Origin: Mobula hypostoma
Lineage: Eukaryota
DNA: 64,000 nt
Assembly: GCF_963921235.1 (NCBI RefSeq)
Contig: NC_086123.1
Span: forward strand, 3,844,001 to 3,908,000
Reading direction: 5' to 3'
The first letter of the stretch is position 1. Every line of letters starts with the position of its first letter. A program made the position numbers and the translations under genes. This document shows, piece after piece, positions 21,127 through 52,400 of this stretch. Below the pieces are notes generated by a model. The model was given only the letters and a program-made list of their open reading frames with translations, searched no databases and had not been told where the DNA came from.

Positions 21127-21902
21127 TACCACCATTCAGGGCCCCAAACAGTCCTTCCAGGTGAGGCAACACTTCACCTGTGAGTCGACTGGGGTGATAT
21201 ACTGCGTCCGGTGCTCCCGATGTGGCCTTTTATATATTGGCGAGACCCGACGCAGACTGGGAGACCGCTTTGCTGAACATCTACGCTCTGTCCGCCAAAG
21301 AAAGCAGGATCTCCCAGTGGCCACACATTTTAATTCCACATCCCATTCCCATTCTGACATGTCTATCCATGGCCTCCTCTACTGTAAAGATGAAGCCACA
21401 CTCAGGTTGGAGGAACAACACCTTATATTCTGTCTGGGTAGCCTCCAACCTGATGGCATGAACATCGACTTCTCTAACTTCCGCTAAGGCCCCACCTCCC
21501 CCTCGTACCCCATCTGTTACTCATTTTTATGCACACATTCTTTCTCTCACTCTCCTTTTTCTCCCTCTGTCCCTCTGAATATACCTCTGGGTCCCCCCCA
21601 CTTGTCTTTCTTCCTGGACCTCCTGTCCCATGATCCTCTCGTATCCCCTTTTGCCTATCACCTGTCCAGCTCTTGGCTCTATCCCTCCCCCTCCTGTCTT
21701 CTCCTATCATTTTGCATCTCCCCCTCCCCCTCCAACTTTCAAATCCCTTACTCACTCTTCCTTCAGTTATTCCTGACGAAGGGTCTCGGCCTGAAACGTC
21801 GACTGTACCTCTTCCTACAGATGCTGCCTGGCCTGCTGCGTTCACCAGCAACTTTGATGTGTGTTGCTTGAATTTCCAGCATCTGCAGAATTCCTGTTGT
21901 TT
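21127..21902 (+). mobile_element. Penelope-like element, 5'-truncated, with GIY-YIG endonuclease
   Basis: FTCESTGVIYCVRCSRCGLLYIGETRRRLGDRFAEH; 12-bp duplication ACCTTATGCCCT at 21115-21126 and 21903-21914. Confidence 0.9.
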
Positions 21903-33614: not shown

Positions 33615-33733
33615 CTATTTGCATCGAGATTGACTGATGCCTTTATTCTCAATGTTGTATTTTGCTTTCGAGAAGCAGATGGCCGCCTTTCGATCACATT
33701 CACAGATAAACTTCGCGCAGTGATAATTACCAC
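33615..33733 (-). CDS. PLA2G1B: PLA2 copy B exon 4
   Basis: 119 nt; [41 protein letters not shown]. Confidence 0.9.
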
Positions 33734-36700
33734 CTGAAAGGAAGCATATTCAAAATAATCCATTATATTAATGATATAGTATTTGCCTTGGATTATGAAA
33801 GAATGAAAGATAATTTTATATTTTAATATATTTTGATAATTCAGCTTACATCTATATAGTATGTGCAACATTCTAATCATTATATAAATGTTCTGTAAAC
33901 AGTTTAAAATACTAATTGTAATTTGGGTTTTTAATTTCATTGTGATGATCTCATCATTTCTAGAGTCAATAGATCCTTTTAAACTGATGTCAGACATGCA
34001 TTGACATCAGAATAACACTTTCAAATCCCTTACTCACTCTTCCTTCAGTTAGTCCTGACGAAGGGTCTCGGCCTGAAACGTCGACTGCACCTCTTCCTAG
34101 AGATGCTGCCTGGCCTGCTGCGTTCACCAGCAACTTTTACGTGTGTTGCTTGAATTTCCAGCATCTGCAGAATTCCTGTTGTTTAAATTTTTCATCTGTC
34201 TGGTGAGGAGATTGTACGTAACAAAAGAGCTTGGGAGAAACCTCTTTTAATGTGATCAGAATTGTCCTGCAAATATCAGCTTAGATATTTTATCTGGTAA
34301 CATACATCAAAGTTGCTGGTGAACGCAGCAGGCCAAGCAGCATCTATAGGAAGAGGCGCAGTCGACGTTTCAGGCCGAGACCCTTCGTCAGAACTAACTG
34401 AAGGAAGAGTAAGTAAGGGATATTTTATCTGGTCATGGCTCCATTGGGATCTTGCTGCAAACAAACTAGTCACAGCATTTTTAATGCATTCTGTAAAATG
34501 CTGAGGTAAAGTGAAGCAAAAATATTCCTCCTTTTATTCATCTGAATCCATTTTCTGTGGGTGAATTTTGAAACCACAGCAGGGATCACAGGACAGATAT
34601 GGAGAGGGTGTTTCCTGTACTGATGGGAAATAGAATCAGGGGTCACTGGCGCAGATTAAGGGCAAACCATTGCGGGTTCAAACTGGGGGAAGATCCTGTG
34701 CCAGAGGGCTGTGGATGCCATGAATTCACTCAAAACTGAAGCTGATTAAATTTGATAAATTGGAGGAATCTGGGAATATTGAAATAAGTCAGGAAAAATT
34801 GTTGAACAAGAAGATAAACCTATATCTTGACAAATAGTGCAGCAGGCTTTCAGAGCCAAATATTTACTCAATCTACTATTTCAAATGATTTTTGATGGTG
34901 TCAGTGCTACCAGACGGTACTTACTCATCAATAATGCTCAGTTCATAACTTGCTCTCTGCATATGATCCAGCAATATCTGGGCCCTGACCACTAGCTGGT
35001 GAGTAACATTGACAACACACACGTGTCAGACAATAACCATCTTCAAATAAGGAGTGTAATTCAGCCATCTTTCACGTTCATAGAGTCGTAAAGGTTTTGC
35101 AGCTCTGAGTCAGGCTCTTCGGCCCAACTCATCCATGCTGACCCACTGTCTTTCTATGCTATCCCATCTGCCTGCACGTGGCCCAGATCCCTCTGAAGCT
35201 TTCCAACTATCTTTGAAATATTGTAATTGCTCCCATCTCCTTTGCACCTTCTACATACCCAGCAGCCTCTGGGTGAACAAGTTGTTCCTTTTAAAACTTT
35301 TTCTACTCCCACATTAAACCTAGACCTCTAGTTTTAGACTTTCCTGCCTTGGAAAACGGCTGTGATTTTTTATTTTATCTATGCCTCTCATTATTCTATA
35401 AACCTCCGTAAGGACACTCCTCAGTCTGTGGGACTATGTCAAAGGCCTTGCTAAATTTCATGGACATTCCTTCCTTTCAATCATCAACATAATCACTCCA
35501 AAAATTCCATCACAACACAATTTCACAAGTAGAAAACTATGCAAACTATCCCTCATCAGTTTTCCAGATCAAAGGCTGGTATATGCTGCCTCTTGAAATT
35601 TCCTCTGGGACCTTTCCATCCACTGATCTTCAGTCATTACCATCTCTTTGGCCCCAACATCACCGTTCTGGAATCATAATGTCACAACCGGGGCTCGTTT
35701 AAATTTTTTTTCAGTTAGTATGTGGGTTGTTTTTTCTCAGGTATTCAGACTTCCTTGGATTGCTTACCCTTTATGTCCCATAAGCAAGGAGTTGTCCAGT
35801 ATTAAGGACCCTCACCACCCAGTACATGCCCTCTTCTCATTGTTACCGTCAGGAAGGAGGTACAGAAGCTTGAAGGCACACACGTCAAGACCAGCTTCTT
35901 TCTCTCTGCCACCTGATTTCTAAATGGACATTAAACTTATGAACACTACCCCATTACTTTTTTATTTCCTTTTTTTGTACTATGTATTTAATTTAACTAT
36001 TTAATAAACATATATGTAATTACTGCCATTCAGTTTATTTCTGTATCTATCAGGAGTGGAGAGAATGGGCAATTTCAAGTTCCTGGGTGTCAATATCTCT
36101 GAGGACTTAACCAGGTCACTACATATTGATGCAGCTACAGAGAACATAGAAACATAGAAACTCTACAACACAATACAGGCCCTCTGTCCATAAAGCTGTG
36201 CCAAACATGTCCTTAACTTAGAAATTACCAAGGGTTACCCGTAGCCCTCTATTTTTCTAAGCTCCATGTATCTATCCAGGAGTCTCTTAAAAGACCCTAT
36301 CGTATCCGCCTCCACCACCGTCGCCAGCAGCCCATTCCACGCACTCACCACTCTCTGCGTAAAAAACTTACCCCTGACATCTCCTCTGTACCTACTTCCA
36401 AGCACCTTAAAACTGTGCCTTCTCATGCTAACTATTTCAGCCCTGGCAAAAAGCCTCTGACTATAACACGATCAATGCCTCTCATCATCTTTTACACCTC
36501 TATCAGGTCACCTCTCATCCTCCGTCTCTCCAAGGAAAAAAGGCCGAGGTCACTCAACCTATTCTCATAAGGCATGCTCCCCAATCCAGGCAACATCCTT
36601 GTAAATCTCCTCTGCACCCTTTCTATGGTTTCCACATTCTTCCTATAGTGAGGTGACCAGAACTGAGCACAGTACTCCAAGTGGGGTCTGACCATGGTCC

Positions 36701-39700
36701 TATATAGCTGCAACATTACCTCTCAGCTCCTAAACTCAATCCCATGATTGATGAAGCCCAATGCACAGAACCACAGAAGGCAAGACAGCAGCTATATTTG
36801 ATCTGGAATTTGAGGAAATTTGGTTTGTCAACTAAAACACTCAAAAATTTCTCCAAGTGTACCGTGGAGAGCGTTCTGACTGGCTGCATCACTGTCTGGT
36901 GTGCGGGAGGGGGCTACTGCACAAGATTGAATTAAGTTGCAGAAACCTGTAAAATTAGTCAGCTCCGTCATGTGTACCAGCCTCTGTAGTATCCAAGACA
37001 TCTTCAAGAGTGATGCCTCAGGAAGGCGGCATCCATCATTAAGGACCCTCACCACCCAGTACATGCCCTCTTCTCATTGTTACCATCACGGAGGAGGTAC
37101 AGAAGCCTGAAGACACACACTCAGCAATTCAGGAACAGTTTCTTCCCCTCTGCCATCCGATTTCTAAATGGACATTAATCCCATGAACACCACCTCACTA
37201 CTTCTTTATTTCTGTTATTTTGCACTATTTGTTTAAACTCAATTAATTAATAGACATGTGTATAAAAAAAAAGCACCTCGTGCTTTCCCGGCATATATGA
37301 TGAATAAACTGTTCTTGGGCTTCCAGCTGGGTACCGGTATTGATTATCACTGATGCTTTGATGACGTCAGATATAATTAATACCTGTACTTGGGTAGAAG
37401 CCCAAGAAGAGTTTATTAGACATATATACTTAATGTTAATCAGTTTTTCTGTATATTTATTTATCGTGTATTTCATTGTACTGCTGCTGTAAAGTTAACA
37501 AATTCCACAACATGTGCTGGTGATATTAAACCTGATTCCGATTCGGATTCTAATTATTCTTCTTAGAACTCACTCACTTTGTGTTGCAGGTGTCTCGTTT
37601 GGGATCAGACACTCTCTTTGCATTTATCAATTTTATTCAATTTGGGTAACTGAATCAGCACAGGATTTTCTCTGTCTTTCAGTGTAGTCGTTGACTTGGG
37701 GGTTAATGTTTTGCCTGGGCTCCGGGGCTGTTCTGAATTCCTATGTGTTTCAGGGTGTAGGTCAGGGGAACTGGCCAACCCCTCTTTGCTCAGTCATTGT
37801 GGGCCCTTGTCTGGTGAAACTTTGTCCGAGTTCTTCTGTGTATCTGAGCGATTTCTGTTTGTCAGGATTCTGCATAGTTTGCCTGAGCTCTTGTTAGTTT
37901 TCTTGCTTACTTTCTGTCTTAAATCTGTTGTTGTGTTTGAATTGCCAGAGTCTCTGTGATTTTGCACTGGAGTTCACTGGTGACCCTCACATATAATTCA
38001 CCAAGATGCATTAACGAGTGTTTACAAGAGCAGGTCAGAACTTAAACATCCCATAAGAAGTGATTGATGTCTTACTGCTTGAAGCCTTTCCACCATCAGC
38101 CAGGCGTGGGATATCGCCCCAGTACCTGGGTGAGCGCAGCTCCCAAACACAGAAGGAGCTCGTCATTACTAGTGACAAAGGAACTGATTTCATTGCAACT
38201 CTGTCTGTATGGATGGCATGAAAAACAAAGCTTTTCACTGTGGCTTGTTACCTGCGACAATAATAAACCAAATGAAATGATCTCTACCAATATCCACTAT
38301 CAGCATTCTGTGCTATTGTACAATTCAGCAGCCAGTGTATCTCAGCCAAATCTCCCAGACCAATAACCTTTACCATCTAGAGGGACAGAGATCAGCATCA
38401 CATACAGGTCCCTGCAAGTCTCACACCATCCAGACATGGAACATAACCCGTTCCTCCATCATCACTGGGTCTGAATGCTGGAGCTTCAGCACAAGAGCAT
38501 TGTGGGAGAACCATCACCAGGGCAACTCCAGTGGTTCAAGATGGCAGCTCACCAGCACCGTCACAAAGACAATGAGGGATGGACAAAAGTTGCTGACCAT
38601 GGAAGCAGAGATAAAAATTAGACAATGAGGCACTCTCTGATCATACTCACCTGTACATTCGAGTTTCCCATTTGAGCAGCTGTACTTGTAATATACCATT
38701 TTGGGTGAATAGACTATTCTGCACTTCTCTTTCTTCTCAGCATCTTCATAACAGTTGTCATGGGTCTGGCAGCACCTGTAAAATCACAGATAATGTTTAG
38801 TAGAAAACTCATGGACTAGAGTTAACAGAACACTGTTACAGCAGCCTCCAGTGTCAGACACTTCCCATGTAGAGCTAAGAGTCAGGAGGTGATCTGAGCT
38901 GAGGGTAACTGAGCAGGCTCATATCGTACCAGGGAGTTGAGGAGGAGCTTCACAGTGGGACGTGGAATCAGGATCTGTGGGGACTCAGGCAGGAATGTGG
39001 AAAAGAATTCCTCCAAGTGACATGACCACAATAGACCTGAGAAGGTGACCAATGTTTAGTTCTTCCCTTTTTCTATGGATTGTGTGTGTTCAAGACCCAA
39101 CAACAAGCAACAGACTGATCGACCAGCTGGTTGCCCTCTCTCCTTTCCTTCCTCGCTCCCTTACTAAGGTAGCTACAGTGTCATGGTTCTCTCTTGTGCT
39201 GCCATGATCGAACCCCCTGTTCAATCCTCCAGAAGGACAGAATCCTCCCTGGGAGCAGCTGCTCTGTCCTCGGTGTGTTCCACTACACAGTCCTGAACTC
39301 CTGTACAGACCGGTGGCACTGCAAACCCAGCACTACCCTCTGTACCATCACTGGGGCTCTGAAGTCAACAGGCACTGAGTGTCTCCCAGCCCTAGCAAGT
39401 GTCATTGTCCTCCCCCACCCTCAGCAGGAAACCTTCAGCCCCAGCTGCACCAATCTGTGATCTGTCTCTCGTGATCACTGCAGGACAGACGGCATATCCT
39501 GATCACGGCTCACATCTCAGAAAACACCACTGGAGAGGTTCCAGCAAATCAACTCGCTAAAACCACGATGCAAAAAATTCTTCAACAGAGACCGCATTAC
39601 CAACTCAATGGAGCCAATTTCAGGACTGAAAGTGACACCAAGCAGAAAATTAATACACGGCCATATCTGCACCAACGGAAACTTAACTCAAGTCGGAGTT

Positions 39701-40296
39701 CTGACAACTACAGCAAAAAGCAGATTGTGAGATATACCATCAGCAATTGCCCTCTCTGATTATTTCCAGGACACACGGCCAGTATTTGTGTGGCCACAGT
39801 AGGCACCATAACCCGGCTGCGAACCCCATGACATCAATTGTCACTCACTACCACCATCAGAAACATATTTCACATTGGCAGATTTAATGGGGTATCTTAA
39901 AGCTTCAGTGAAGATGCAATCCTGCTGCCTCTGACAATGAATGAGAACATTTCCCTGTCCCTGGACTCCAATGGATGGTAACTGGCTCTGTAGAGATCGT
40001 CTGTCCACCTACCGTTCAAGGTCATCCACTGGTGTCCCAGATCCACCAGTTCCACAGTAACAGCCGTAGTTATTGAATTGCAGTGGTGAAGTGATGCTTG
40101 GGTTGGCACATTTAATCATTTTATTGAACTGATAAAGGTTCCTGGACTCAATGGAAGTGCTCCCAACACCAGCTACATCAGGAGAGAGAGGAACAGACAG
40201 ACACAAACAGGTTAGAACATGAAGCAACCAACATCAAAGTAAGGCTCACTCGAGGAGAGTCTCCTTACCTGAGAGCAGAAGCAGGACAAACAGGCC
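33615..40296 (-). CDS. PLA2G1B: Group I PLA2 copy B: exons 2-4 intact (40172-40013, 38775-38651, 33733-33615); exon 1 truncated (40296-40269) with native ATG lost; chimeric gene or very young pseudogene
   Basis: Mature product [123 protein letters not shown]. All splice sites, 14 Cys and H48/D49/D99 are retained. Homology to copy A stops at codon 3 (A: ATGTTGGGCCTG; B: GCTTTTGGCCTG). Confidence 0.85.
34018..34185 (+). mobile_element. Penelope terminal fragment replacing about 240 bp of intron 3 in copy B
   Basis: The equivalent of A 51911-52150 is missing in B and this repeat lies in its place. Confidence 0.8.
34051..34086 (+). ncRNA. Minimal type I hammerhead ribozyme motif of a Penelope repeat (representative copy)
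   Basis: AGTC-CTGACGA-AGGGTCTCGGCCT-GAAA-CG-TC-GACT: conserved CUGANGA and GAAA boxes, GUC cleavage triplet, AGTC/GACT stem I and palindromic ACGT stem III. Confidence 0.65.
34299..34418 (-). mobile_element. Penelope terminal fragment, copy-B-specific
   Basis: 15-bp duplication GATATTTTATCTGGT (34284-34298, 34419-34433); empty site in A near 51800-51815. Confidence 0.85.
36142..36765 (-). mobile_element. CR1 3' end nested in an L2 fragment (about 35790-37530)
   Basis: [19 protein letters not shown]; CATAGAAA tail repeats at about 36145-36160. Confidence 0.85.
38651..38775 (-). CDS. PLA2G1B: PLA2 copy B exon 3
   Basis: 125 nt; TTTTACAG acceptor, G|GTGAGT donor; [41 protein letters not shown]. 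Confidence 0.9.
40013..40172 (-). CDS. PLA2G1B: PLA2 copy B exon 2
   Basis: 160 nt with the same splice sites as copy A; covered by ORF 40009..40227. Confidence 0.9.
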
Positions 40297-40525
40297 AAAA
40301 GCAGGCAAGGACGGGATTTTGAGGCCTAGCCTGCAAAAGATTCCTGACCACACAGTAACGACAGCAGCGAACGGGCGTTTCAGAAATTTCTCCAGATGTT
40401 CCTCTGTGCTTTCCCGTCCATTCTCCATCAAATCAGAATTGTCCACGGCCCCTATTTAACAGATACGATATCATTTTGCACCGGAGAGCTGCGCACATGC
40501 AGGCGCGCCGCCATCTTCTCCTCCC
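40297..40525 (-). mobile_element. Retroelement 5'-UTR-like segment fused to PLA2 copy B exon 1
   Basis: CpG-rich; begins GGAGAAGATGGCGGCG, a YY1 consensus typical of internal LINE promoters. The family assignment is from resemblance only. Confidence 0.55.
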
Positions 40526-41207
40526 GCCAGACAAGATTATTGTCCTAAACTTAAGACGAGACCTTAAGCCTTAAAGTTATAGACAGCTATTAGCCTACTC
40601 ACTTGAGAGAGGTTATACTGTAGCAACCTATAAGTCAAAGACTAATTTACTTATCTATTTTGGTCTCTTTTCTGAATGAGTTTAGCTGTCAGTAATCACT
40701 ATTTCGAGTGGTGGGACCACCCCTCACAACCAAGGAGGGGATACTTCCAGCTAACAAAGCAGATTAAACATCATTATTTTATTCTTAAAGAGCACATTTA
40801 CTCTCTGCAGTAATTCGAACAGAGATTATAATTCTAAAGAAGATTTCCAGACACAAGTACCATTCTTACAAAAACTTTGCAATGAGTTGCAGACAGACAT
40901 GTCAGGGCCACAGAAAGGAGGCTTTCTGCAGTTGTAAGTCTCGGGTTGAGACCGAGGAGAAGATTCTATGTCTTCATCTCTGTCAGTCCTCACAACCCCA
41001 CTTCCTTCTAAAGTTTATATCCATTTTATTGCCATTCATCTAAAGTCACCTCATTGGCCCGTGATGTTTTCACAACTGGATTTATCAGGTTAGATGGCAG
41101 GACCCTTAGATTAAAGTAGACAATGTGTTTTCTCTGGATTGGGTTCAAGTCTCAGGTAGGTTCCTGTCCCTGAACCTGCACGTTATTTCTCGATGGGAAA
41201 CGGAAGT

Positions 41208-41915
41208 AGAATCATAGAGAAGTACAGAACAAAAATTGTCCATGCCGAAAACTATTAAATTGCCTACTCCCATCGACCTGCACCGGACCATAACCCTCCA
41301 TACCCCTACCATCCATGCACCGATCCAAACTTCTCTTAAGTGTTGAAATCGAGCTCTCATGCACCACTTACGCTGGCAGCTTGTTCCACGCTCTCACCAC
41401 CCTCTGAGTGAAGAAGTTTCCCTTCATGTTCTCCTTAAACTTTTCACCTTTCACCCTTAACCCATGACCTCTGGTTGTAGTCTCACTCAACCTCAGTGGA
41501 AAACGCCTGCTTGCATTTACAATACCTAAGGACTAATAATTTTGTACATCTCTATCAAATCTCCTCTCAATCTTCTACGTTCTAAGGAATACTGTCCTAA
41601 CCCATGTAATCTTTCCTTATAACTCAGGTCCTCAAGCCCCAGCAACACATCCTTGTAAATATTCTCTGTATTTGTTCAACCTTGTTTATAACTTTCCTGT
41701 TAGTAGGTGATCAAAACTGCACACAATACTCCAAATTAGGCCTCATTAACGTCTTATACAGCTTCAACATAATATCCCATCTCCTGTACTCAGTACATTG
41801 ATTTATGAAAACCAATGTGGCAAAAACTTTCTTTATGACCCTATGAACCTGAGAGGCCACTTTCAATGAATTATGGATCCCTTTGCTCCACCGCACTCTT
41901 CTGTGCCCTACCATT
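41208..41915 (-). mobile_element. CR1 3' fragment
   Basis: LKLYKTLMRPNLEYCVQF. Confidence 0.8.
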
Positions 41916-41919
41916 CGGT

Positions 41920-42270
41920 GAGCTGCCTCCTAACCCTGCACCGGAAGATCAAACGCTCTCTTGAACTCAACCACGAGTTGGTGGAAGGACTGAGCTGTAG
42001 GGGGAACCTTGTTCTCACAGAGCATTGAACAGGTGAATGGAGTCCGAGTGATTCACCACGTACGCACATCATCACTGAACCGACCTGGCTGGGCTTGGAA
42101 AGTCAGCTCACACTGGGTCATAAACTTCCTGCAGCCGTTAGGGTCACCGGAGTATCTGCCTGGTGGAGGGATGCTCGGCTGTGATCCAGAATCAGCTGAA
42201 GGAATGGCTGAGACTGTGATGGGGAAGATGTGGGACATCCCGGAGTGGGATCGTCGGTGCTGAAGGCTGT
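41920..42270 (-). mobile_element. Ty3/Gypsy (Sushi-like) gag fragment
   Basis: PPPGRYSGDPNGCRKFMTQCELTFQAQPGRFSDD. Confidence 0.75.
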
Positions 42271-42512
42271 AAATTGCAGGCTCTATCCCTCCAGAAACGT
42301 TTTTAAGGTGAAAACATACGTAAAAGAAGTGAAAAAGCTTTTTGCTTACCATCTGGAAGATGTCGACTATGGGAACGTCGTACGCTGGCGCCATCTTGAC
42401 CACTTTTTTCATGTTCTGAATTGATAGAAAGTGGGTGAGTGATCCATGAGTTTCAAAAGAGATTTGCCAAATTTTGAGATCCTGTGATTTGGTGAGAGTA
42501 AAGAGAGAATGA

Positions 42513-42520
42513 AAGAGAGA

Positions 42521-42576
<56 letters not shown>

Positions 42577-42592
42577 GGAGAGAAAGAGAGAG
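42513..42592. repeat. (GA)n microsatellite
   Basis: Seen directly. Confidence 0.95.
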
Positions 42593-45500
42593 TGAGTGTG
42601 GAGGGAAAAGAGAGCAGATGAGGCTGAGTTTCAAAAATGTTCCTTGAAGCTTGGGAGCTTTTGAGATCCTGTGATTCAGAGAGAGTGAGAATGAAGGTCG
42701 GATAGAGACCAGATAATATACAGAGATGAAGAGCAAGATAGGGATTTTGAATTCACTCCATGTTTGATGAAATAGACTGTAACCTAAGGAAAATTATGAT
42801 TTTTTAATCTTAGACAAAGTTGCTTTGCTCGTGATGAGCTAAAGTTGGGAGGTGTTTTACCTTTCCTTTAACTATGATATTCCAATCCATTTGTTAGTTA
42901 TCTGAACTATAGTTGGTGAAAACAAAACATGAACTGGGTCATGTACAATTCAGGAAGATATAATAAAACTCACAGGGATTTGGAATATTGGCTCAAAGCT
43001 TTAAAAATAGACAATACTGTTTTGGTAATTCTGCCAAATATTTTAGGACAATTAGGAGGAATCATAAATGTTGTTTTCCTCAATAAGAATGGGCTTATTT
43101 TCTCTTTCTGACAAGCTGAACCAAACATAAATGGTCAATACTCCTGTTCAAACTGCTCTTCTGGAGCAAGAGTTTGTTGGGAAAACTACTACTTATTTTA
43201 ACTTAGTTACAGTAAGGAGCAGTCTTTGTCTTGTACAATGCGAATGCACAGATGTAATGATCACTTCTTACACATCACATGCAAATAATCAATAAAACTG
43301 CTAAGAGTTGGAACACTGACTAAAAATGTAATTTGAATTGCTGAGTTTGTCAGGTAGCAATAATCTGCAGCCTGAGAACAAAGGATTGTAATGGAATAAA
43401 AAGGCAAATGAGGGGGCTGTGATGAGTTGCCCGACACCGTTGGTTGGCAGATTTCAAGTTCAGCTGTCTGTCCCTGCTCCCGAGTAGAAACTTTGAACCT
43501 CACCCAAACAGGGTCAAACATACAGTGGTAGGTTGGGGTAGGGAAAGGGAACATTCTGAGGTTTGGAAGCCCAGAGCTGCATCATAGAATGGAAACTGCA
43601 GGGAGTGAAGAGCCACATTTCTTTTTGTGTATTGCAGATGAAGTAATTCTGTGAGTATTGAGGGGAAGTGACAGGGAAGAATGGAGAGGGAGGTGACACA
43701 ACCACAGTCATTAATTTACCAGGTTCCATGGTGGAACATCTGGTCCATCAGGACTCAGAGTGTCAGTGTACGGTGATCCAGATCAGAAACATTGAATAGG
43801 TTCCAGAGCATCAGTCAGCTCTCCCATCCAGGATGGGCAAGTTCATTCCGATCACGTAGATGGACTGCTTCAAGTATCAGCAGAGTTGTGTCTCACATCA
43901 GAATATTTCTCCTGTTGTTCCTTGTGCCACCTTGGTCAACATAATGTCTTCACTTCCCTGGTCTTCTCCTGGCCTGGTCTGCCTGATCCTTCAGGCTGTA
44001 TCCCGCATTCGTCATCAGCAATGGAGAATCAGAGGGATGAAGTGAACATTCATCGTTAGTGGATGGTCTGGTGCCCCAACACTGCGTGTGGGACTGGGAA
44101 AAGGTTGAATCATGTGGCTACACTCTCTATGGTTCCTGATGGGACTGCACTAGGTTAGCACTGACACAGATGTTGTTATTTGGTTTCCACTCCGGCCATC
44201 TTGTCTACCTGGGAGTAAACCGTGCTCATTGAGGCAAATCCAGTTTCCTTACCACAGCCGTCTTCAGTGTCGACAGGAGAAACAATTCTTTCTCTGGGAT
44301 CTCACAGTCAGCAATGAATTGCTCTTCTTTGGTGCAACTCCATTACATTTTGTTTCCAGTGCTCCTTCGCAGTTCTTGAATCAGAATCAGGTTTATTATC
44401 ACGGACATACGTCATACAGTATATATGTCAGATGTCATGGTCAACCTCTCAAAACACTTCATCGCAGTGGATGTGAGCGAAGGACTTGATGAAGTCCCTC
44501 ATTCATTCTATTGTGGTTGTTGGATTTTCTGAGTATGCCCGCAAGAAAATGAATCTCAGGCTTGTATATAGTGCATATATATACTTTGAACTTTGAAATT
44601 TAATAGCTACGTACAAGACTTAAGATCTTGGCTTGTTTCGGACAATAAAATGGGTATACCCGATATCATCACGTTCACTCCTGACATGGTTTTGTTTCTG
44701 CCTCCCCGTGTCCTAGGGTGTGGAGTGTGTGTGGTCACACATTTGGATGCTTAATGCTCTGTTAAACTGATGTGTAGACTGGTGCCCCGTGGGTCTCTTT
44801 ATGCCCCAACAGGGCTGTAAAACTGCCCCTTTGTGATACCCTCCCTCAATTTGACAATAAAGTTGCAAGGGTCAAGTTTTGAACAGTCAGTTTCGTGCTA
44901 ATGCTGAGATGGGGGCAATTTAGGTTTCAGTGGGTGATATTTGTTGGACCTGTCCCCCAAACTCTCTCTGGAAAGTGGAGCTGGAGGAAGGAGGGTGGAA
45001 GGGGTTCTTTTATTGATGGGGTCACCACCATGGTCACCAATCCCCAGGAAGAGCACCACCTCCCTCTCCATCCCTCCATGACTCGTCCCTTTCACACCTG
45101 AAAGTTGCTTAACCTTTAGGGCACAGAAAATGAGGCTCCATCATCACTACAGCTGCCATTCTGTGACAATATTCCTCTTCTAAGTTTGACCCCATTTGGT
45201 CGAGGTTCACATTGTGCTCAGGAGTTGGGGTGAAGCAGGAAATATAGCTTATGATCTGTTCAACCCAATACCTCAAATACCAACCCAACACCCCGACAAT
45301 TCCCACCTTCACCCACATTTCATCCTATTGTAAATCAACATTTTCTCACAAGTCAGCCAGAAAACCCAGTGCTTCAACTTGGGTTGTTTCAGTACAAATT
45401 CCGATTGTTATTGGTCAGAACTATTCATTTATGTTTGGTGAGATAAAGATGAGCAGGTGTGTGCATTTGCATGGAATGAGATTCTAGATCTTCTTCAGCA

Positions 45501-46131
45501 GAATGAGGGATTTGCATTTTATTCATATCCAGTATGTATGGGGAACTGTTTATATGGAGCTGTACGTGACTGGAATGGAATTTTGATCAATTCCTCTGAA
45601 TTAATTAGTATAGATAACTTACTAATAAAAAAATTGTGTTCTTGTGATTGAGGGAGAAGGTCAAAAGTCATGCAGGTGCTTTACATGATGGAAGACTGTT
45701 AAAAGCTTAACTTTTCAGTGAATTGAAACAAGGTCGTCAAAGAAAAAGAAGAATGCAAAATGTCTGTGGCTCAGACACATATCTTAACGTCTGAAATCTG
45801 TAGGAATGCTGGAGGTTATTAATCATGCAGACACATCCGGACACCTCAAATCAAACAAAACTGAATGGTCTTCATGTTTTATCATTTTCCAATCTCTGGT
45901 TCTGAAACCTCTCATGCAACTCGCAGGGCAAGTCCCACAGTGACTCTTCTCATTTTCAGAGGTGACACCACATCCTCACCATATTGTGATACCAATTATC
46001 GAGAGTTCGTGTCGTAACAATTCCAACCCATCACCCCGTCTCACTCTGTATTCAGTGTCTATGTGTCAATCAGTGAAACCCATCATGAGCGCACTTGAGG
46101 TAGTTACACTCACTCATAATAGAACACAGTC

Positions 46132-46197
46132 TCACACACACGCACACACTCATACATGTAAATTGACACACACTCAAACACACACACACACACACAC
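46132..46197. repeat. (CA)n microsatellite upstream of the copy A promoter, mirrored as (TG)n at 57702-57770
   Basis: Seen directly. Confidence 0.9.
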
Positions 46198-46254
46198 TGA
46201 GAAGAGTCGGAAGCAGTCAGGATTGGCTCTGTCTCTCCAGCTCAGTCAAATAGA

Positions 46255-46320
46255 GATCAGCTGTATCAACAGGAGAGTTTGTCTTTATCTTATCCATGTT
46301 ATCAGCTCCCAATATATAAT
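46255..46320 (+). promoter_or_regulatory. Proximal promoter of PLA2 copy A: TATA box, GATA-type sites and an E-box
   Basis: TATATAA at 46313-46319; CAGCTG at 46258-46263; TTATCT and TTATCA (reverse WGATAA) between them. Function is inferred from position only. Confidence 0.65.
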
Positions 46321-46374
46321 CCAGGGACTGAACCTCACAAGTGTGATTTCCAGGACAGGGAAGAGCAAACGACA

Positions 46375-46408
46375 ATGTTGGGCCTGTTTGTCCTGCTTCT
46401 GCTCTCAG
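46375..46408 (+). CDS. PLA2G1B: PLA2 copy A exon 1 (signal peptide [11 protein letters not shown])
   Basis: ATG at 46375, about 55 nt after the TATATAA motif; donor CAG|GTAAGG at 46408/46409. Confidence 0.9.
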
Positions 46409-49400
46409 GTAAGGAGACTCTCCTCGAGTGAGCCTTACTTTGATGTTGGTTGCTTCATGTTCTAACCTGTTTGTGTCTGTCTGTTCCTCTCTCTCCTGAT
46501 GTAGCTGGTGCTGGGAGCACTTCCATTGAGTCCAGGAACCTTTATCAGTTCGGTGCAATGATTAAATGTGCCAACCCAAGCATCACTTCACCACTGCAAT
46601 TCAATAACTACGGCTGTTACTGTGGATCTGGTGGATCTGGGACACCAGTAGATGACCTTGACCGGTAGGTGGACAGACGATCTCTACAGAGCCAGTTACC
46701 ATCCTTTGGAGTCCAGGGACAGGGAAATGTTCTCATTCATTGTCAGAGGCAGCAGGATTGCATCTTCACTGAAGCATTAAAATACCCCATTAAATCTCCC
46801 AATGTGAAATATGTTTCTGATGGTGGTAGTGAGTGACGATTGATGTCATGGGGTTTGCAGGCAGGTTATGGTGCCTGCGGTGGCCACACAAATACTGGCC
46901 GTGAGTCCTGGAAATAATCAGAGAGGGCAATTGCTGATGGTATATCTCACAATCTGCTTTTTGCTGTAGTTGTCAGTACTCCGACTTGAGTTAAGTTTCC
47001 GTTGGTGCAGATATGGCCGTGTATTAATTTTCTGCTTGGTGTCACTTTCAGTCCTGAAACTGGCTCCATTGAGTTGGTAATGCGGTCTCTGTTGAAGAAT
47101 TTTTTGCACCGTGGTTTTAGCGAGTTGATTTGCTGGAGCCTCTCCAGTGGTGGTTTCTGAGATGTCAGCCGTGATCAGGATATGCCGTCTGTCCTGCAGT
47201 GATCACGAGAGACAGATCACAGATTGGTGCAGCTGGGGCTGCAGGTTTCCTGCTGAGGGTGGAGGAGGACAATGACACTTGCTAGGGCTGGGAGACACTC
47301 AGTGCCTGTTGACTTCAGAGCCCCAGTGATGGTACAGAGGGTAGTGCTGGGTTTGCAGTGCCACCGGTCTGTACAGGAGTTCAGGACTGTGTTGTGGAAC
47401 ACACCGAGGACAGAGCAGCTGCTCCCAGGGAGGATTCTGTCCTTCTGGAGGATTGAACAGGGGGTTCGATCATGGCAGCACAAGAGAGAACCATGACACA
47501 GTAGCTCCCTTAGTAAGGGAGCGAGGAAGGAAAGGAGAGAGGGCAACCAGCTGGTCGATCAGTCTGTTGCTTGTTGTTGGGTCTTGAACACACACAATCC
47601 ATAGAAAAAGGGAAAAAATAAGCATTGGTCACCTTCTCAGGTCTATTGTGGTCATGTCACTTGGAGGAATTCTTTTCCACATTCCTGCCTGAGTCCCCAC
47701 AGATCCTGATTCCACATCCCACTGTGAAGCTCCTCCCCAACTCCCTGGTACGATATGAGCCTGCTCAGTTACCCTCAGCTCAGATCACCTCCTGACTCTT
47801 AGCTCTACATGGGAAGTGTCTGACACTGGAGGCTGCTGTAACAGTGTTCTGTTAACTCTAGTCCATGAGTTTTCTACTAAACGTTATCTGTGATTTTACA
47901 GGTGCTGCCAGACCCATGACAACTGTTATGGTGATGCTTCGACAAAAGAGAAGTGTGGATTTCTCAAATCACCCAAAGTAATATATTACAAGTACAGCTG
48001 CTCAAGCGGGAAAATCGAATGTGATAGTGAGTATGATCGGAGAGTGTCTCATTGTCTTATTTTTATCTCTGCTTCCATGGTCAGCAACTTTGGTCCATCC
48101 CTCATCGTCTTTGTGAAGGTGCTGGTAAGGACATGTTCGGCACAGCTTTGTGGACAGAGGGCCTGTATTGTGCTGTAGAGTTTCTATGTTTCTATGGTCT
48201 CTGTAGCTGCATCAATATGTAGTGACCTGGTTAAGTCCTCAGAGATATTGACACCCAGGAACTTGAAATTGCCCATTCTCTCCACTCCTGATAGATACAG
48301 AAATAAACTGAATGGCAGTAATTACATATATGTTTATTAAATAGTTAAATTAAAGACATAGTACAAAAAAAGGAAATAAAAAAGTAATGGGGTAGTGTTC
48401 GTAAGTTTAATGTCCATTTAGAAATCAGATGGCAGAGAGAAAGAAGCTAGTCTTGACGTGTGTGCCTTCAAGCTTCTGTACCTCCTTCCTGACGGTAACA
48501 ATGAGAAGAGGGCATGTACTGGGTGGTGAGGGTCCTTAATACTGGACAACTCCTTCCTGAGGCAGCTTATGGGACATAAAGGCTAAGCAATCCAAGGAAG
48601 ACTATACACCTGAGAATTATGAGAGGCATAGATAAAATAAACAATCGCAGCCCTTTTCCAAGGCAGGAAAGTCTAAAACTAGAGGTCTAGGTTTAACGTG
48701 GGAGTAGAAAAAGTTTTAAAAGGAACAACTTGTTCACACAGAGGCTGCTGGGTATGTAGAAGGTGCAAAGGAGATGGGAACAATTACAATATTTCAAAGA
48801 TAGTTGGAAAGCTTCAGAGGGATCTGGGCCAAGTGCAGGCAGAAGGGTTAGCATAGAAAGACAGTGGGTCAGCATGGATGAGTTGGGCCGAAGAGCCTGG
48901 CTCAGAGCTGCAAAACCTTTACGACTCTATTAATGTGAAAGATGGCTGAATTACGCTCCTTATTTGAAGATGGTTATTGTCTGACACGTGTGTGTTGTTA
49001 ATGTTACTCACCAGCTAGTGGTCAGGGCCCAGATATTGCTGGATCATATGCAGAGAGCAAATTATGAACTGAGTATTATTGATGAGTAATTTATAATTAT
49101 CATGGAAAAAGATAGAATCAAAGAGGACAGGGAAATTTTTAATTGGGGAAAGGCAAATTATGAGGCTATAAGGCTAGAACTTGCGGATGTGAATTGGGAT
49201 GATGTTTTTGCAGGGAAATGTACTATGGACATGTGGTCGATGTTTAGAGATCTCTTGCGGGATGTAAGGGATAAATTTGTCCCGGTGAGGAAGATAAAGA
49301 ATGATAGGGTGAAGGAACCATGGGTGACAAGTGAGGTGGAAAATCTAGTCAGGAGGAAGAAGGCAGCATACATGAGGTTTAGGAAGCAAGGATCAGATGG

Positions 49401-52400
49401 CTGTATGGAGGAATGTAGGGAAGCAAGAAAGGAGCTTAAGACGGGGCTGAGAAGAGCAAGAAGGGGGCATGCGAAGGCCTTGGCGAGTAGGGTAAAGGAA
49501 AACCCCAAGGCATTCTTCAATTATGTGAAGAAAAAAAGGATGACAGGAGTGAAGGTAGGACCGATTAGAGATAAAGGTGGGAAGATGTGCCTGGAGGCTG
49601 TGGAAGTGAGCGAGGTCCTCAATGAATACTTCTCTTTGGTATTCACCAATGAGAGGGAACGTGATGATGGTGAGGACAATATGAGTGAGGTTGATGTTCT
49701 GGAGCATGCTGATATTAAGGGAGAGGAGGTGTTGGAGTTGTTAAAATACATTAGGACAGATAAGTCCCCGGGGCCTGACGGAATATTCCCCAGGCTGCTC
49801 CATGAGGCGAGAGAAGAGATTGCTGAGCCTCTGGCTAGGATCTTTATGTCCTCGTTGTCCACGGGAATGGTACCGGAGGATTGGAGGGAGGCGAATGTTG
49901 TTCCCTTGTTCATAAAAGGTAGTAGGGATAGTCCGGGTAATTAAAGACCAGTCAGCCTTACGTCTGTGGTGGGAAAGCTGTTCGAAAAGATTCTTAGAGA
50001 TAGGATCTATCGGCATTTAGAGAATCATGGTCTGATCAGGGACAGTCAACATGGCTTTGTGAAGGGCAGATCGTGTCTAACAAGCCTGATAGAGTTCTTT
50101 GAGGAGGTGACCAAGTATATAGATGAGGGTAGTGCAGTGGATGTGATCTATATGGATTTTAGTAAGGCATTTGACAAAGTTCCACATGGTAGGCTTATTC
50201 AGAAAGTTAGAAGGCATGGGATCCAGGGGAGTTTGGCCAGGTGGATTCAGAATTGGCTTGCCTGCAGGAGGCAGAGGGTGGTGGTGGAGGGAGTACATTC
50301 AGATTGGAGGATTGTGACTAGTGGTGCCCCACAAGGATCTGTTCTGGGACCTCTACTTTTCGTGATTTTTATTAACGACCTGGATGTGGGGGTAGAAGGG
50401 TGGGTTGGCAAGTTTGCAGACGACACAAAGATTGGTGGTGTTGTAGATAGTGTAGAGGATTGTCAAAGATTGCAGAGAGACATTGATAGGATGCAGAAGT
50501 GGGCTGAGAAGTGGCAGATGGAGTTCAACCCGGAGAAGTGTGAGGTGGTACACTTTGGAAGGACAAACTCCAAGGCAGAGCACAAAGTAAATGGCAGGAT
50601 ACTTGGTAGTGTGGAGGAGCAGAGGGATCTCAGGGTACATGTCCACACATCCCTGAAAGTTGCCTCACAGGTGGATAGGGTAGTTAAGAAAGCTTATAGG
50701 GTGTTAGCTTTCATAAGTCGAGGGATAGAGTTTAAGAGTTGCGATGTAATGATGCAGCTCTATAAAACTCTGGTTAGGCCACACTTGGAGTATTGTGTCC
50801 GGTTCTGGTCACCTCACTATAGGAAGGATGTGGAAGCATTGGAAAGGGTACAGAGGAGATTTACCAGGATGCTGCCTGGTTTAGAGAGTATGCATTATGA
50901 TCAGAGATTAAGGGAGCGAGGGCTTTACTCTTTGGACAGAAGGAGGATGAGAGGAGACATGATAGAGTTGTACAAGATAATAAGAGGAATAGATAGAGTG
51001 GAAAGCCAGCGCCTCTTCCCCAGGGCACCACTGCTCAATACAAGAGGACATGGCTTTAAGGTAAGGGGTGGGAAGATCAAGGGAGATATTAGAGGAAAGT
51101 TTTTTACTCAGAGAGTGGTTGGTGCGTGGAATGCACTGCCTGAGTCAGTGGTGGAGGCAGATACACTAGTGAAGTTTAAGAGACTACTAGACAGGTATAT
51201 GGAGGAATCTAAGGTGGGGGCTTATATGGGAGGCAGGGTTTGAGGGTCGGCACAACATTGCGGGCCAAAGGGCCTGTACTGTGCTGTACTATTCTATGTT
51301 CTATGTATAAGTACCGTCTGGTAGCACTGACACAATCAAAAAGCATTTGAAATAGTAGATTGAGTAAATATTTGGCTCTGAAAGCCTGCTGCACTATTTG
51401 TCAAGATATAGGTTTATCTTCTTGCTCAACACTTTTTCCTGACATATTTCAATATCCCCAGATTCCTACAATTTCCCAAATTTAATCAGCTTCAGTTTTG
51501 AGTGAATTCATGGCATCCACAGCCCTCTGGCACAGGATCTTCCCCCAGTTTGAACCCTCAATGGTTTGCCCTTAATCTGCGCCAGTGACCCCTGATTCTA
51601 TTTCCCATCAGTACAGGAAACACCCTCTCCATATCTGTCCTGTGATCCCTGCTGTGGTTTCAAAATTCAACCCACAGAAAATGGATTCAGATGAATAAAA
51701 GGAGGAATATTTTTGCTTCACTTCATCTCAGCATTTTACAGAATGCAATAGAAATGTTGTGACCAGTTTGTTTGCAGCAAGATCCCAATGGAGCCATGAC
51801 CAGATAAAATATCTAAGCTGATATTTGCAGGACAATTCTGATCACATTAAAAGAGGTTTCTCCCAAGCTCTTTTGTTACATACAATCTCCTCACCAGACA
51901 GATGAAAAATATGCTCAGTTTAACAGTCAGGAGAGAGGGAGATGGGTCACTTCTCCCTCAGGAGCACAGTGGAATATCACTCTTCCAGTTTGTGTTAATG
52001 TCACTGCAGTGGGACTGAAAACTCAGAGTCAGAAGCAAGATCCAAGGCTGCTGCCTGGGGCCACATCAGTGGTGAAGGGCTGGGGGTCACCAGGGACTTT
52101 TCTAGAATTCTAGATTCAGCTATGATTGTGGTGTAGATCTTCACAGGATTTGTTATTCTGATGTCAATGCAAGTCTGACATCAGCTTGAAAGCATCCATT
52201 GACTCTAGAAATGATGAGGTCATCACAATGAAATTAAAAACCCAAATTACAATTAGTATTTTAAATGATTTACAGAACATTTATATAAAGATTAGAATGT
52301 TGCACATAATATATAGATGGAAGCTGAAATATCAAAATATATTAAAATATAAAAATATCTTTCATTCCTTCATAATCCAAAGCAAATATCATTAATATAA

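What the first reader, a model, noticed from the sequence alone, without database searches (positions are those of the whole stretch)
40269..40525. Promoter and start-codon swap: retroelement 5'-UTR fused in frame to PLA2 copy B
Seen: B loses homology to A exactly at codon 2/3. Upstream lies a CpG-rich segment with a YY1 motif (GCCGCCATCTT, about 40507-40517), oriented towards the gene. It supplies an in-frame ATG at 40428, giving [53 protein letters not shown], which runs into the native splice donor. A 20-codon uORF (40514-40452) precedes it. Inference: B may be a chimeric gene with a new TE-driven expression domain and a 44-aa extension that could turn the signal peptide into a membrane anchor. 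Otherwise it is a just-killed gene.
Basis: partly seen in the sequence, partly recalled or inferred. Interest (0 to 1): 0.8.

Follow-up and report, generated by a model that had tools for sequence, protein, structure and literature searches.

The report
PLA2 duplicate fused to retroposon head
A duplicated devil-ray phospholipase A2 gene has lost its promoter and start codon and now abuts the first 230 bases of a very abundant mobile element; that element offers an in-frame ATG, but nothing shows it is used, so this is most likely an ordinary beheaded gene copy.

Summary
Copy B (minus strand) matches copy A at about 96% up to Gly-3 of exon 1, then homology stops. B lacks A's TATA promoter, 5'UTR, ATG and codon 2. 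The YY1-like box, the 20-codon uORF and the in-frame ATG at 40428 (187-aa product) are all present.

The upstream piece (40297-40526) is the head of an interspersed repeat with roughly 10^4 genomic copies. It has a sharp 5' end and is cut short at the PLA2 junction, with 3 bp of microhomology. This is therefore a DNA rearrangement breakpoint, not a transposon insertion. B's old upstream region lies 17.4 kb away (57702-61072), with intact copy A nested between in inverted orientation.

The in-frame ATG is weak evidence:
- 26% of shuffled sequences give one.
- It is the fourth ATG of the head.
- Its Kozak context is weak.

The genome is Mobula hypostoma. RefSeq models B differently (XP_062890223.1, start at 42394), using a GT..CT intron that looks like a homology artefact. 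A second paralogue (XP_062890225.1) shares the join, so the fusion is not recent. No transcript evidence could be obtained.

Verdict: most likely a beheaded duplicate kept intact by gene conversion; about 20% chance that the element drives a real chimeric gene.

The parts
40297..40526 (-). 3'-truncated 5' head of a high-copy interspersed retroposon family (about 10^4 copies). CpG-rich. The sharp family terminus is at 40525/40526.
   Evidence: summed word depth in DNA run X1 is 341,175 in bin 40384-40540, against about 20-50 in single-copy flanks. Contigs end at 40524-40526. A loose end before 40313 shows that other copies continue with unrelated sequence; another copy is translated inside XP_062929627.1 and continues '...CFGRPRKRS'. 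CpG observed/expected 0.93.
40507..40517 (-). YY1-like box AAGATGGCGGC, 9-19 nt from the element's 5' end
40452..40514 (-). 20-codon uORF (MAARLHVRSSPVQNDIVSVK, then stop). Its ATG is in strong context. Two more upstream ATGs lie at 40498 and 40474.
40269..40428 (-). Candidate chimeric first coding exon: ATG 40428, 43 TE-derived codons, then Gly-3 (in the GGC microhomology) and eight PLA2 codons, plus 1 nt to the native donor
   Evidence: The nearest upstream in-frame stop is at 40458.
40294..40296 (-). Breakpoint microhomology GGC, shared by the retroposon family (…CTTTTGGC|GACC…) and PLA2 codon 3 (ATGTTGGGC|CTG)
   Evidence: table 7
40013..40172 (-). B exon 2 (propeptide, N-terminal helix, Ca loop), intact
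38651..38775 (-). B exon 3 (His48/Asp49 region), intact. It contains an 18% divergent tract relative to A.
33615..33733 (-). B exon 4 including the stop codon, intact
46200..46377 (+). Segment of copy A with no counterpart in B: TATA-type core promoter (tatataa at about 46314), 5'UTR, ATG 46375 and codon 2
46375..52548 (+). Intact copy A. It encodes exactly the 145-aa protein P0001, named 'phospholipase A2, minor isoenzyme-like' (Mobula hypostoma) in NCBI.
57702..61072 (-). B's displaced upstream region: the homologue of A 43142-46200, ending in the same (CA)n microsatellite
42350..42394 (-). First coding exon of the RefSeq model of B (MAPAYDVPIVDIFQM, donor GTAAGC). It carries the second AAGATGGCG box and lies inside a 113-codon ORF.
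41290..41953 (-). Degenerate 3' end of a CR1-type LINE (…LEYCVQF…RGDLIEMYK…), very high copy number, same orientation as B
   Evidence: The CR1 motif was recognised from memory.

Best explanation
Copy B is a 5'-beheaded duplicate of a pancreatic-type (group IB-like) secreted phospholipase A2 gene of the devil ray Mobula hypostoma.

A DNA-level rearrangement removed 178 bp holding the core promoter, 5'UTR, ATG and codon 2. It used 3 bp of microhomology on the gene side and a (CA)n microsatellite on the upstream side. It placed 17.4 kb between B's old upstream region and its codon 3. That 17.4 kb consists of TE-rich filler plus the intact inverted sister copy A.

The filler base next to the gene is the first 230 nt of an abundant YY1-headed retroposon, pointing at the gene and cut off at the junction. 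The in-frame ATG it carries is most likely incidental. B is most likely not translated into a secreted enzyme from it. It survives as an intact-looking relic because exchange (gene conversion) with neighbouring paralogues keeps refreshing its exons.

Shown: the anatomy, the repeat nature of the piece, the truncation, the nested layout, the intact exons 2-4 and the shared junction in a second paralogue.
Inferred: the mechanism of the break, the lack of productive expression and the role of gene conversion.
For: Homology break and missing 178 bp.

Repeat identity, sharp 5' end and truncation at the junction: (depth 341,175 against about 25; loose end before 40313).

The in-phase ATG is expected in 26% of shuffles.

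ATG 40428 is the fourth ATG of the head. It has T at -3 and sits a few nt behind the stop of a uORF. The first ATG is in strong context.

The window copy carries a CpG-to-CpA change at 40498 relative to the family majority. This is one hint of past methylation (table 3).

In the runs laid, the RefSeq first exon has no depth in any of the three presumed RNA runs. Exon 2 has none in X9 and X19 and only a trace in X13; exon 3 has traces only. No exon1-exon2 joint is among those listed.

The collections searched hold no 187-aa product and no short PLA2 fragment of this kind.

RefSeq used RNA-seq from nine organs and still did not build the TE-ATG model.

Mosaic pattern between paralogues: intron 1 is 0/96 different, intron 2 is 2.3% different, and a 130-bp tract in exon 3 is 18% different with dS 0.28. 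B's exon 3 resembles M. birostris P0008, and B2's exons 3-4 resemble P0007 and P0004. This fits gene conversion.

Other ray PLA2 models also have foreign N-termini: P0003 and P0090.
Against: - Exons 2-4 of B, all splice sites, the 14 cysteines, His48/Asp49 and the Ca loop are intact.
- The same join is kept in a second paralogue that differs at about 23 residues and is also intact.
- The retroposon head must contain the family's internal promoter if the family spread by retroposition, and it points the right way with a CpG-rich, little-decayed sequence.
- Pancreas, the expected site of expression, was not among the nine organs sequenced. The absence of transcripts is therefore uninformative; even copy A left no RNA-derived protein in the collections.
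Confidence: 0.6

Rival explanations
1. This is a functional chimeric gene. The retroposon head acts as an internal Pol II promoter, with the YY1 box fixing the start near 40526. The transcript splices from the native donor (40269) to exon 2, and ATG 40428 yields a 187-aa PLA2. Its old signal peptide sits behind a 44-aa extension and acts as a long signal peptide or a signal anchor.
For: - Sense orientation, an intact element 5' end and a YY1-like box 9-19 nt from that end, as in human L1, where YY1 sets the initiation site (abstract of PMC11602158).
- An open in-phase frame.
- Intact downstream exons and splice sites.
- The junction is retained in two diverged paralogues.
- An unverified first-stage note (s1-143369) reports the same in-frame ATG at the second locus.
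- Hydropathy shows that the old h-region, extended by PAF, is the strongest hydrophobic segment at residues 41-55.
Against: - There is no transcript or protein evidence.
- An in-frame ATG is expected by chance about 1 time in 4.
- Three upstream ATGs and a weak Kozak context.
- RefSeq, with nine-organ RNA-seq, did not build this model.
- Promoter activity of the head is assumed, not shown.
Confidence: 0.22
2. The RefSeq model is right. B is transcribed from a promoter near 42400. It starts at ATG 42394 (MAPAYDVPIVDIFQM) and splices from 42350 to 40299, giving the 159-aa XP_062890223.1 with a 15-residue longer but workable signal peptide.
For: - The model exists, and the paralogue XP_062890225.1 uses the same upstream exon and the same join.
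- The donor is a perfect GTAAGC.
- The annotation used RNA-seq and ProSplign.
- The region around 42394 is CpG-rich and carries the window's second AAGATGGCG box.
Against: - The bases before 40299 are CT, not AG, so the intron would be GT..CT.
- The 'acceptor' coincides with residue 2 of the homologous proteins (L aligned to F). That is what a protein-alignment boundary gives, not a splice signal.
- The only in-frame AG sites in the retroposon part lack pyrimidine tracts.
- Direct splicing to exon 2 is out of frame.
- The exon lies inside a 113-codon ORF that recalls a retrotransposon gag start from memory only; Pfam found no match.
- The three presumed RNA runs have zero depth on 42268-42424.
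Confidence: 0.07
3. The junction is an artefact of the ONT-based assembly, a false join or false duplication in a repeat-rich PLA2 array, and B is really intact.
For: - The assembly is Nanopore-based.
- The junction abuts a 10^4-copy repeat on one side and a microsatellite on the other.
- No short-read contig listed bridges 40296. The DNA contigs listed on B's intron 2 carry A-type letters at 15 of 17 checked places, probably because the contig builder merges near-identical paralogue variants.
Against: - The gene-side breakpoint is in unique exon sequence with only 3 bp shared. That is not where assemblers misjoin.
- The same join appears in a second, diverged locus.
- B's exon 3 is a distinct natural sequence close to that of M. 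birostris P0008.
- Contigs of X1 and X9 match 40500-40760 exactly across the other end of the repeat.
Confidence: 0.04

Closest known systems
TE-derived alternative promoters and first exons (chimeric TE-gene transcripts, such as L1 5'UTR- or LTR-initiated gene transcripts)
   Same: A mobile-element 5' end lies in sense orientation immediately upstream of a gene body. It has a YY1-type box near the element's first base, a usable splice donor downstream and an open frame into the gene.
   Different: No transcript has been shown. The element was not inserted but is cut at its 3' side by a rearrangement that also removed the gene's own promoter and ATG. The TE would therefore be the only promoter, not an alternative one.
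5'-truncated (beheaded) duplicates in tandem or inverted gene arrays, including PLA2 clusters
   Same: The duplicate lacks its promoter and start codon, sits beside an intact sister copy, and shows mosaic similarity that suggests gene conversion.
   Different: No stop codon, frameshift or splice defect in the remaining 404 nt, and the same beheaded form is kept in two paralogues.
Human LINE-1 5' end (GGGGGAGGAGCCAAGATGGCCG..., YY1 site at about +13 to +21); sequence recalled from memory
   Same: The element starts (C)GGGAGGAGAAGATGGCGGCG, with the YY1 core at a similar distance from the first base.
   Different: The family here appears short and non-coding, with a copy number typical of SINE-like elements. 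Homology to L1 was not tested and is not claimed.
Vertebrate group IB secreted phospholipase A2 (PLA2G1B, pancreatic type)
   Same: Four-exon structure, propeptide ending in Arg, Ca loop YGCYCGxGG, His48/Asp49, 14 cysteines and a Pfam PF00068 match.
   Different: B has no native initiator Met or signal-peptide start. The family is expanded to at least seven genes on one M. hypostoma chromosome.

Membership tests
TE-initiated chimeric gene | The upstream segment is a mobile element in sense orientation | tested here: met
   roughly 10^4-fold depth excess and a sharp 5' terminus at 40525/6; another copy lies in an unrelated gene model.
TE-initiated chimeric gene | Transcripts start in the element and splice to the gene's exon 2 | tested here: inconclusive
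   no such joint among those listed, and little or no depth on B's exons in the presumed RNA runs X9, X13 and X19. The runs hold contigs, tissues are unknown and pancreas was not sampled.
TE-initiated chimeric gene | An open reading frame runs from a TE start codon into the gene | tested here: met
   187 codons. However, 26% of shuffles do the same and three ATGs precede it.
Unprocessed (duplicated) pseudogene | Loss of promoter and initiation codon | tested here: met
   A 46200-46377 has no counterpart next to B.
Unprocessed (duplicated) pseudogene | Disabling mutations in the remaining coding sequence or splice sites | tested here: not met
   exons 2-4 are open, GT/AG sites are kept, and all cysteines and catalytic residues are kept.
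Unprocessed (duplicated) pseudogene | Neutral evolution after disablement | tested here: inconclusive
   dN/dS is 2.65 in exons 1-2 (9 changes only) and 0.68 in exon 3 with dS 0.28. The pattern is a mosaic, and no outgroup DNA was obtainable.
Group I secreted PLA2 (PF00068) | Ca loop, His48/Asp49 and a conserved cysteine pattern | tested here: met
   PF00068 is precomputed for P0005; these alignment columns are invariant.
Group I secreted PLA2 (PF00068) | N-terminal cleavable signal peptide starting at the initiator Met | tested here: not met
   Met1 and Leu2 are absent. The h-region would lie at residues 45-53 of the TE-ATG product. No signal-peptide predictor was available.
LINE-like (L1-type head) non-autonomous retroposon | Uniform 5' end with a YY1 box within the first ~20 nt and a high copy number | tested here: met
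LINE-like (L1-type head) non-autonomous retroposon | 3' tail recognised by a LINE, target-site duplications and absence of an ORF | not testable with these tools
   This copy lacks its 3' part. First-stage notes s1-144001, s1-144042, s1-144829 and s1-144450 describe about 600-720-bp ORF-less elements with such heads, but I could not link them by sequence. Coding capacity looks absent.

The most novel reading that the evidence does not exclude
In devil rays, the head of an abundant, non-coding, YY1-headed retroposon has been captured by rearrangement as the sole promoter, start codon and 44-residue N-terminal extension of a duplicated secreted PLA2. This chimeric form has been kept in two paralogues, which would give the enzyme a new expression domain or membrane tethering.
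Probability: 0.2. Interest if true: 0.6.

Novelty: new member of a known kind. Interest (0 to 1): 0.3.

Why it matters
If the retroposon head really drives B, this would be a clean vertebrate case of a gene whose whole 5' end (promoter, start codon and signal-peptide context) was replaced by a fragment of a mobile element and then retained through a further duplication. That case would be useful for studying how expanding secreted-enzyme or toxin-like families gain new expression domains.

If it does not, which is more likely, the value is practical. The RefSeq protein XP_062890223.1, and probably XP_062890225.1, have N-termini that rest on a non-canonical splice. B should also be treated with caution when counting or testing selection in the ray PLA2 expansion, because gene conversion blurs the signal.

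Tried and rejected
- Rfam scan of 40000-43200: no match, so the multi-species 31-mer sharing is not a small RNA gene.
- Pfam on the TE-ORF, the 113-codon upstream ORF and CR1 pieces: no family. PDB sequence search and ESM Atlas on the upstream ORF: only noise or a weak DUF4939 lead.
- Bacterial promoter/terminator scan: irrelevant to a vertebrate and empty.
- In-window copies of 40290-41300: none.
- Look-up of earlier findings by sequence: blank.
- Read laying gave no exon1-exon2 joint among those listed and little or no depth on B's exons in the presumed RNA runs. This is uninformative because the runs are contigs, tissues are unknown and A is not seen either.
- DNA of the second fusion locus and of the M. 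birostris loci could not be fetched because the file was too large or the protein was not on record. The fusion therefore could not be dated, nor B's lineage polarised.
- Search for short RNA-derived PLA2 fragments: no candidate.
- Simple inversion models for the layout were considered and rejected. No single inversion restores two intact genes; only a nested arrangement fits.
- RNA-mediated chimera (template switching) was rejected because B keeps its introns and 9 kb of flanking homology.
- 'Accelerated evolution' of exon 3 as evidence that B is under selection was rejected as decisive, because synonymous divergence is equally inflated (dS 0.28).

Full report
**What the window is.** The window has no N runs. 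Copy A (46375-52548, plus strand) encodes exactly the 145-aa protein P0001, named 'phospholipase A2, minor isoenzyme-like [Mobula hypostoma]', from assembly GCA_963921235.1 on a 39.5-Mb chromosome. The genome is therefore that of the Atlantic pygmy devil ray. According to a 2026 preprint (10.64898/2026.10.27.761883):
- It is a 3.48-Gb Nanopore-based assembly with 61-66% repeats.
- L2/CR1/Rex LINEs predominate.
[quoted passage not shown] Pancreas was not sampled.

**The observation.**
- B (minus strand) matches A at 96.2% from 40299 down to 38548, and with indels on to 31280. It has no similarity to A upstream of that.
- A reads caATG TTG GGC CTG TTT…; B reads …cct gct ttt GGC CTG TTT…. True homology starts at GGC (40296-40294), which is codon 3.
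- The donor (exon ends at 40269, GT at 40268-40267), intron 1 (0 differences in 96 nt) and exons 2-4 are in place.
- Exons 2-4 (40172-40013, 38775-38651, 33733-33615) are open. They keep the Ca loop, His48/Asp49 and all 14 cysteines.
- AAGATGGCGGC lies at 40517-40507. The 20-codon uORF runs 40514-40452.
- ATG 40428 opens a frame that runs into the PLA2 frame and gives 187 codons.
- The piece is CpG-rich: observed/expected 0.93, against 0.35 for the window.

**What the upstream piece is.** I laid the contigs of one DNA run and three presumed RNA runs on 38500-43200. The results:
- 40297-40526 is a very abundant interspersed repeat. Summed word depth in the DNA run is 341,175 in bin 40384-40540, against roughly 20-50 in the single-copy flanks. 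That is about 10^4 copies in a 3.5-Gb genome.
- The same piece is held by runs of at least three coded organisms.
- Contigs stop at 40524-40526, so the family has a sharp end there. The YY1-like box therefore sits 9-19 nt from the element's first base. From memory, this resembles the 5' end of human L1, where YY1 dictates the initiation site (abstract of PMC11602158).
- On the gene side the family goes on. The consensus of loose ends before 40313 reads, on the minus strand, …TTTGCCTGCTTTTGGC GACCGCGGTT…. The window instead has …TTGCCTGCTTTTGGC CTGTTTGTCC….
- A search of 1.84 billion representative proteins with the 66-codon frame found one real match, XP_062929627.1. This is an 'uncharacterized protein' of the same species that contains another copy and continues …CFGRPRKRSNRS.

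Three conclusions follow. The window copy is truncated at its 3' side exactly at the PLA2 junction. The junction shares only GGC. The frame is not a conserved protein, so the element looks non-coding.

Other first-stage notes on this genome describe 600-720-bp ORF-less retroposons with a YY1-like head. I could not link them by sequence.

The window copy differs from the family majority at five positions. Most copies also carry one extra base after 40312. One of the five positions is 40498, where the majority letter abolishes the second upstream ATG; that difference is a CpG-to-CpA change (tables 3-4).

**How the junction arose.** A retroposon inserts as a 5'-truncated copy with a tail and target-site duplications. 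Here the head is complete, the rest is missing, and the gene has lost sequence. This is therefore a DNA breakpoint. The wider layout confirms it:
- A's upstream region 43142-46200 is homologous, in reverse orientation, to 61072-57702. Both end in the same (CA)n microsatellite.
- B's original upstream region thus lies 17.4 kb from its codon 3.
- The 17.4 kb between them consists of three parts. The first is a 2.8-kb TE-rich segment X (40300-43141). The second is the complete inverted copy A (43142-54254). The third is a 3.4-kb segment (54255-57701).
- The 178 bp of A that hold the TATA box, 5'UTR, ATG and codon 2 (46200-46377) have no counterpart in B, even at word size 7.
- No single inversion restores two intact genes; the arrangement is nested. 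This agrees with first-stage note s1-143008.

Read on B's strand, segment X contains in order:
- a (CT)n microsatellite;
- a CpG-rich stretch with the window's only other AAGATGGCG (42397-42389);
- a 113-codon ORF starting at 42394, which recalls a retrotransposon gag start from memory only (Pfam found no match);
- the degenerate 3' end of a CR1-type LINE (41953-41290, tens of thousands of copies by depth);
- about 760 bp of low-copy DNA;
- the retroposon head.

**Is the in-frame ATG meaningful?** Statistically it is not. In 20,000 shuffles of the 227-nt piece, 26% give an ATG-initiated frame open to the junction in the required phase. Mechanistically it is poorly placed:
- It is the fourth ATG after the presumed start.
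- The first ATG (40514) has A at -3 and G at +4.
- The third (40474) has A at -3, and its frame ends a few nt before ATG 40428.
- ATG 40428 itself has T at -3.

If translated, the product would have an acidic 18-residue start and a moderately hydrophobic stretch (residues 19-31). The old h-region, lengthened by PAF, would lie at residues 41-55. No predictor was available to decide between a long cleaved signal peptide and a signal anchor.

**What the annotation says.** RefSeq models B as XP_062890223.1 (P0005, 159 aa), with a CDS range of 42394 to 33615. I reproduced it exactly by joining ATG 42394…42350 (MAPAYDVPIVDIFQM, donor GTAAGC) to 40299 (TTT GGC CTG…). I doubt this model for four reasons:
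- The two bases before 40299 are CT, not AG.
- The 'acceptor' falls where residue 2 of homologous PLA2s (Leu) can be aligned to the retroposon's TTT (Phe). That is typical of a protein-alignment boundary, not of a splice site.
- The only in-frame AG sites in the retroposon part lie in purine-rich context.
- Splicing straight to exon 2 is out of frame.

I therefore regard this N-terminus as probably artefactual.

The models do provide one useful fact. A second gene on the same chromosome, XP_062890225.1 (P0121, 169 aa), has the same upstream exon, read ten codons further because the first GT is absent. It has the same join to FGLIVLLLLS. It shares B's derived 'SAGVGS…[11 protein letters not shown]' but differs from B at about 23 residues. 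A first-stage note (s1-143369) places the same 257-nt fusion 62.7 kb beyond this window. The fusion therefore predates a further duplication and is not 'just' made.

**Is B alive?**

Evidence for:
- Exons 2-4 and all splice sites are intact in two beheaded paralogues.
- The head has the right orientation and is little decayed.

Evidence against or neutral:
- The paralogues are mosaics. Intron 1 is identical between A and B and intron 2 differs by 2.3%. A 130-bp tract in exon 3 (38760-38630) differs by 18% with synonymous divergence 0.28. B's exon 3 is closest to that of M. birostris P0008. B2's exons 3-4 resemble P0007 and P0004. Such exchange can keep a dead copy looking intact.
- Transcript evidence is absent but uninformative. 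The RefSeq first exon has zero depth in all three presumed RNA runs. B's exon 2 has none in X9 and X19 and only a trace in X13, and exon 3 shows traces only. No exon1-exon2 joint is among the 15 of 255 joints shown.
- The DNA contigs listed on B's intron 2 carry A-type letters at 15 of the 17 places I checked (16 on the intron). This is probably because the contig builder merges near-identical paralogue variants.
- The protein collections hold no RNA-derived product of A, B or a 187-aa form. Pancreas was never sampled.

**Verdict.** B is a beheaded PLA2 duplicate inside a nested inverted duplication. It is joined by 3 bp of microhomology to the truncated head of a 10^4-copy YY1-headed retroposon. 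My estimates for the four readings:

| Reading | Probability |
|---|---|
| Incidental ATG; B not productively expressed | ~0.6 |
| Retroposon head drives a translated chimeric gene | ~0.2 |
| RefSeq 5' end is real | <0.1 |
| Assembly artefact | ~0.04 |

TE-gene chimeras and beheaded duplicates are both well-known kinds, so this is a new instance and not a new kind.

PLA2s of this class resemble venom enzymes. I therefore only describe where B is broken and give no change that would restore it.

Noticed in passing
window 31280-61072: Nested inverted duplication. The 11.1-kb unit A (43142-54254, plus strand) lies inside its own sister unit B, which is split into 61072-57702 (upstream part) and 40299-31280 (gene body). 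The arms are 90-96% identical.
   Followed up: partly
window 38630-38760 versus 47917-48047: A sharply bounded 130-bp tract in exon 3 differs by 18% between A and B, while the adjoining intron is 0-2% different. Synonymous divergence is also inflated (dS 0.28, dN 0.19). This points to a short gene-conversion or old-allele mosaic and not purely to positive selection.
   Followed up: partly
window 42350-42394 and 40299-40301: RefSeq XP_062890223.1 needs a GT..CT intron (42349-40300). The paralogue XP_062890225.1 uses the same join. This is a likely annotation artefact at a protein-homology boundary.
   Followed up: yes
window 42056-42397: A CpG-rich stretch holds the window's second AAGATGGCG box and a 113-codon ORF ending in …PPPGRYSGDPNGCRKFMTQCELTFQAQPGRFSDDVRTW. 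The ORF recalls the start of Ty3/gypsy-type gag proteins (from memory). Pfam found nothing, and depth suggests 2-8 copies.
   Followed up: partly
window 41290-41953: Degenerate 3' end of a CR1-type LINE (LEYCVQF…RGDLIEMYK…FTQRVVRAWNKLP) with very high copy number. Related pieces lie at 309-601, 2021-2272, 36481-36763 and 50654-51153.
   Followed up: partly
window 58594-58805: A 212-bp self-complementary (foldback, MITE-like) element is inserted in B's upstream arm but absent from A at 45370-45380. Copies or halves lie at 1037-1167, 21763-21901 and 34045-34401.
   Followed up: no
window 36216-38547: A 2.3-kb repeat-rich insertion in intron 3 of B is absent from A, which is contiguous at 48126-48129.
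   Followed up: no
window 42450-42700: A long (CT)n microsatellite is flanked by two copies of a ~45-bp motif (…aatcacaggatctcaaaa…ttgaaactca).
   Followed up: no
proteins P0003 (Hypanus sabinus) and P0090 (Mobula birostris): Other ray PLA2 gene models also carry foreign N-termini in place of the [11 protein letters not shown] signal peptide, and P0003 also has duplicated exons. Beheaded or rearranged copies therefore seem common in batoid PLA2 arrays.
   Followed up: no
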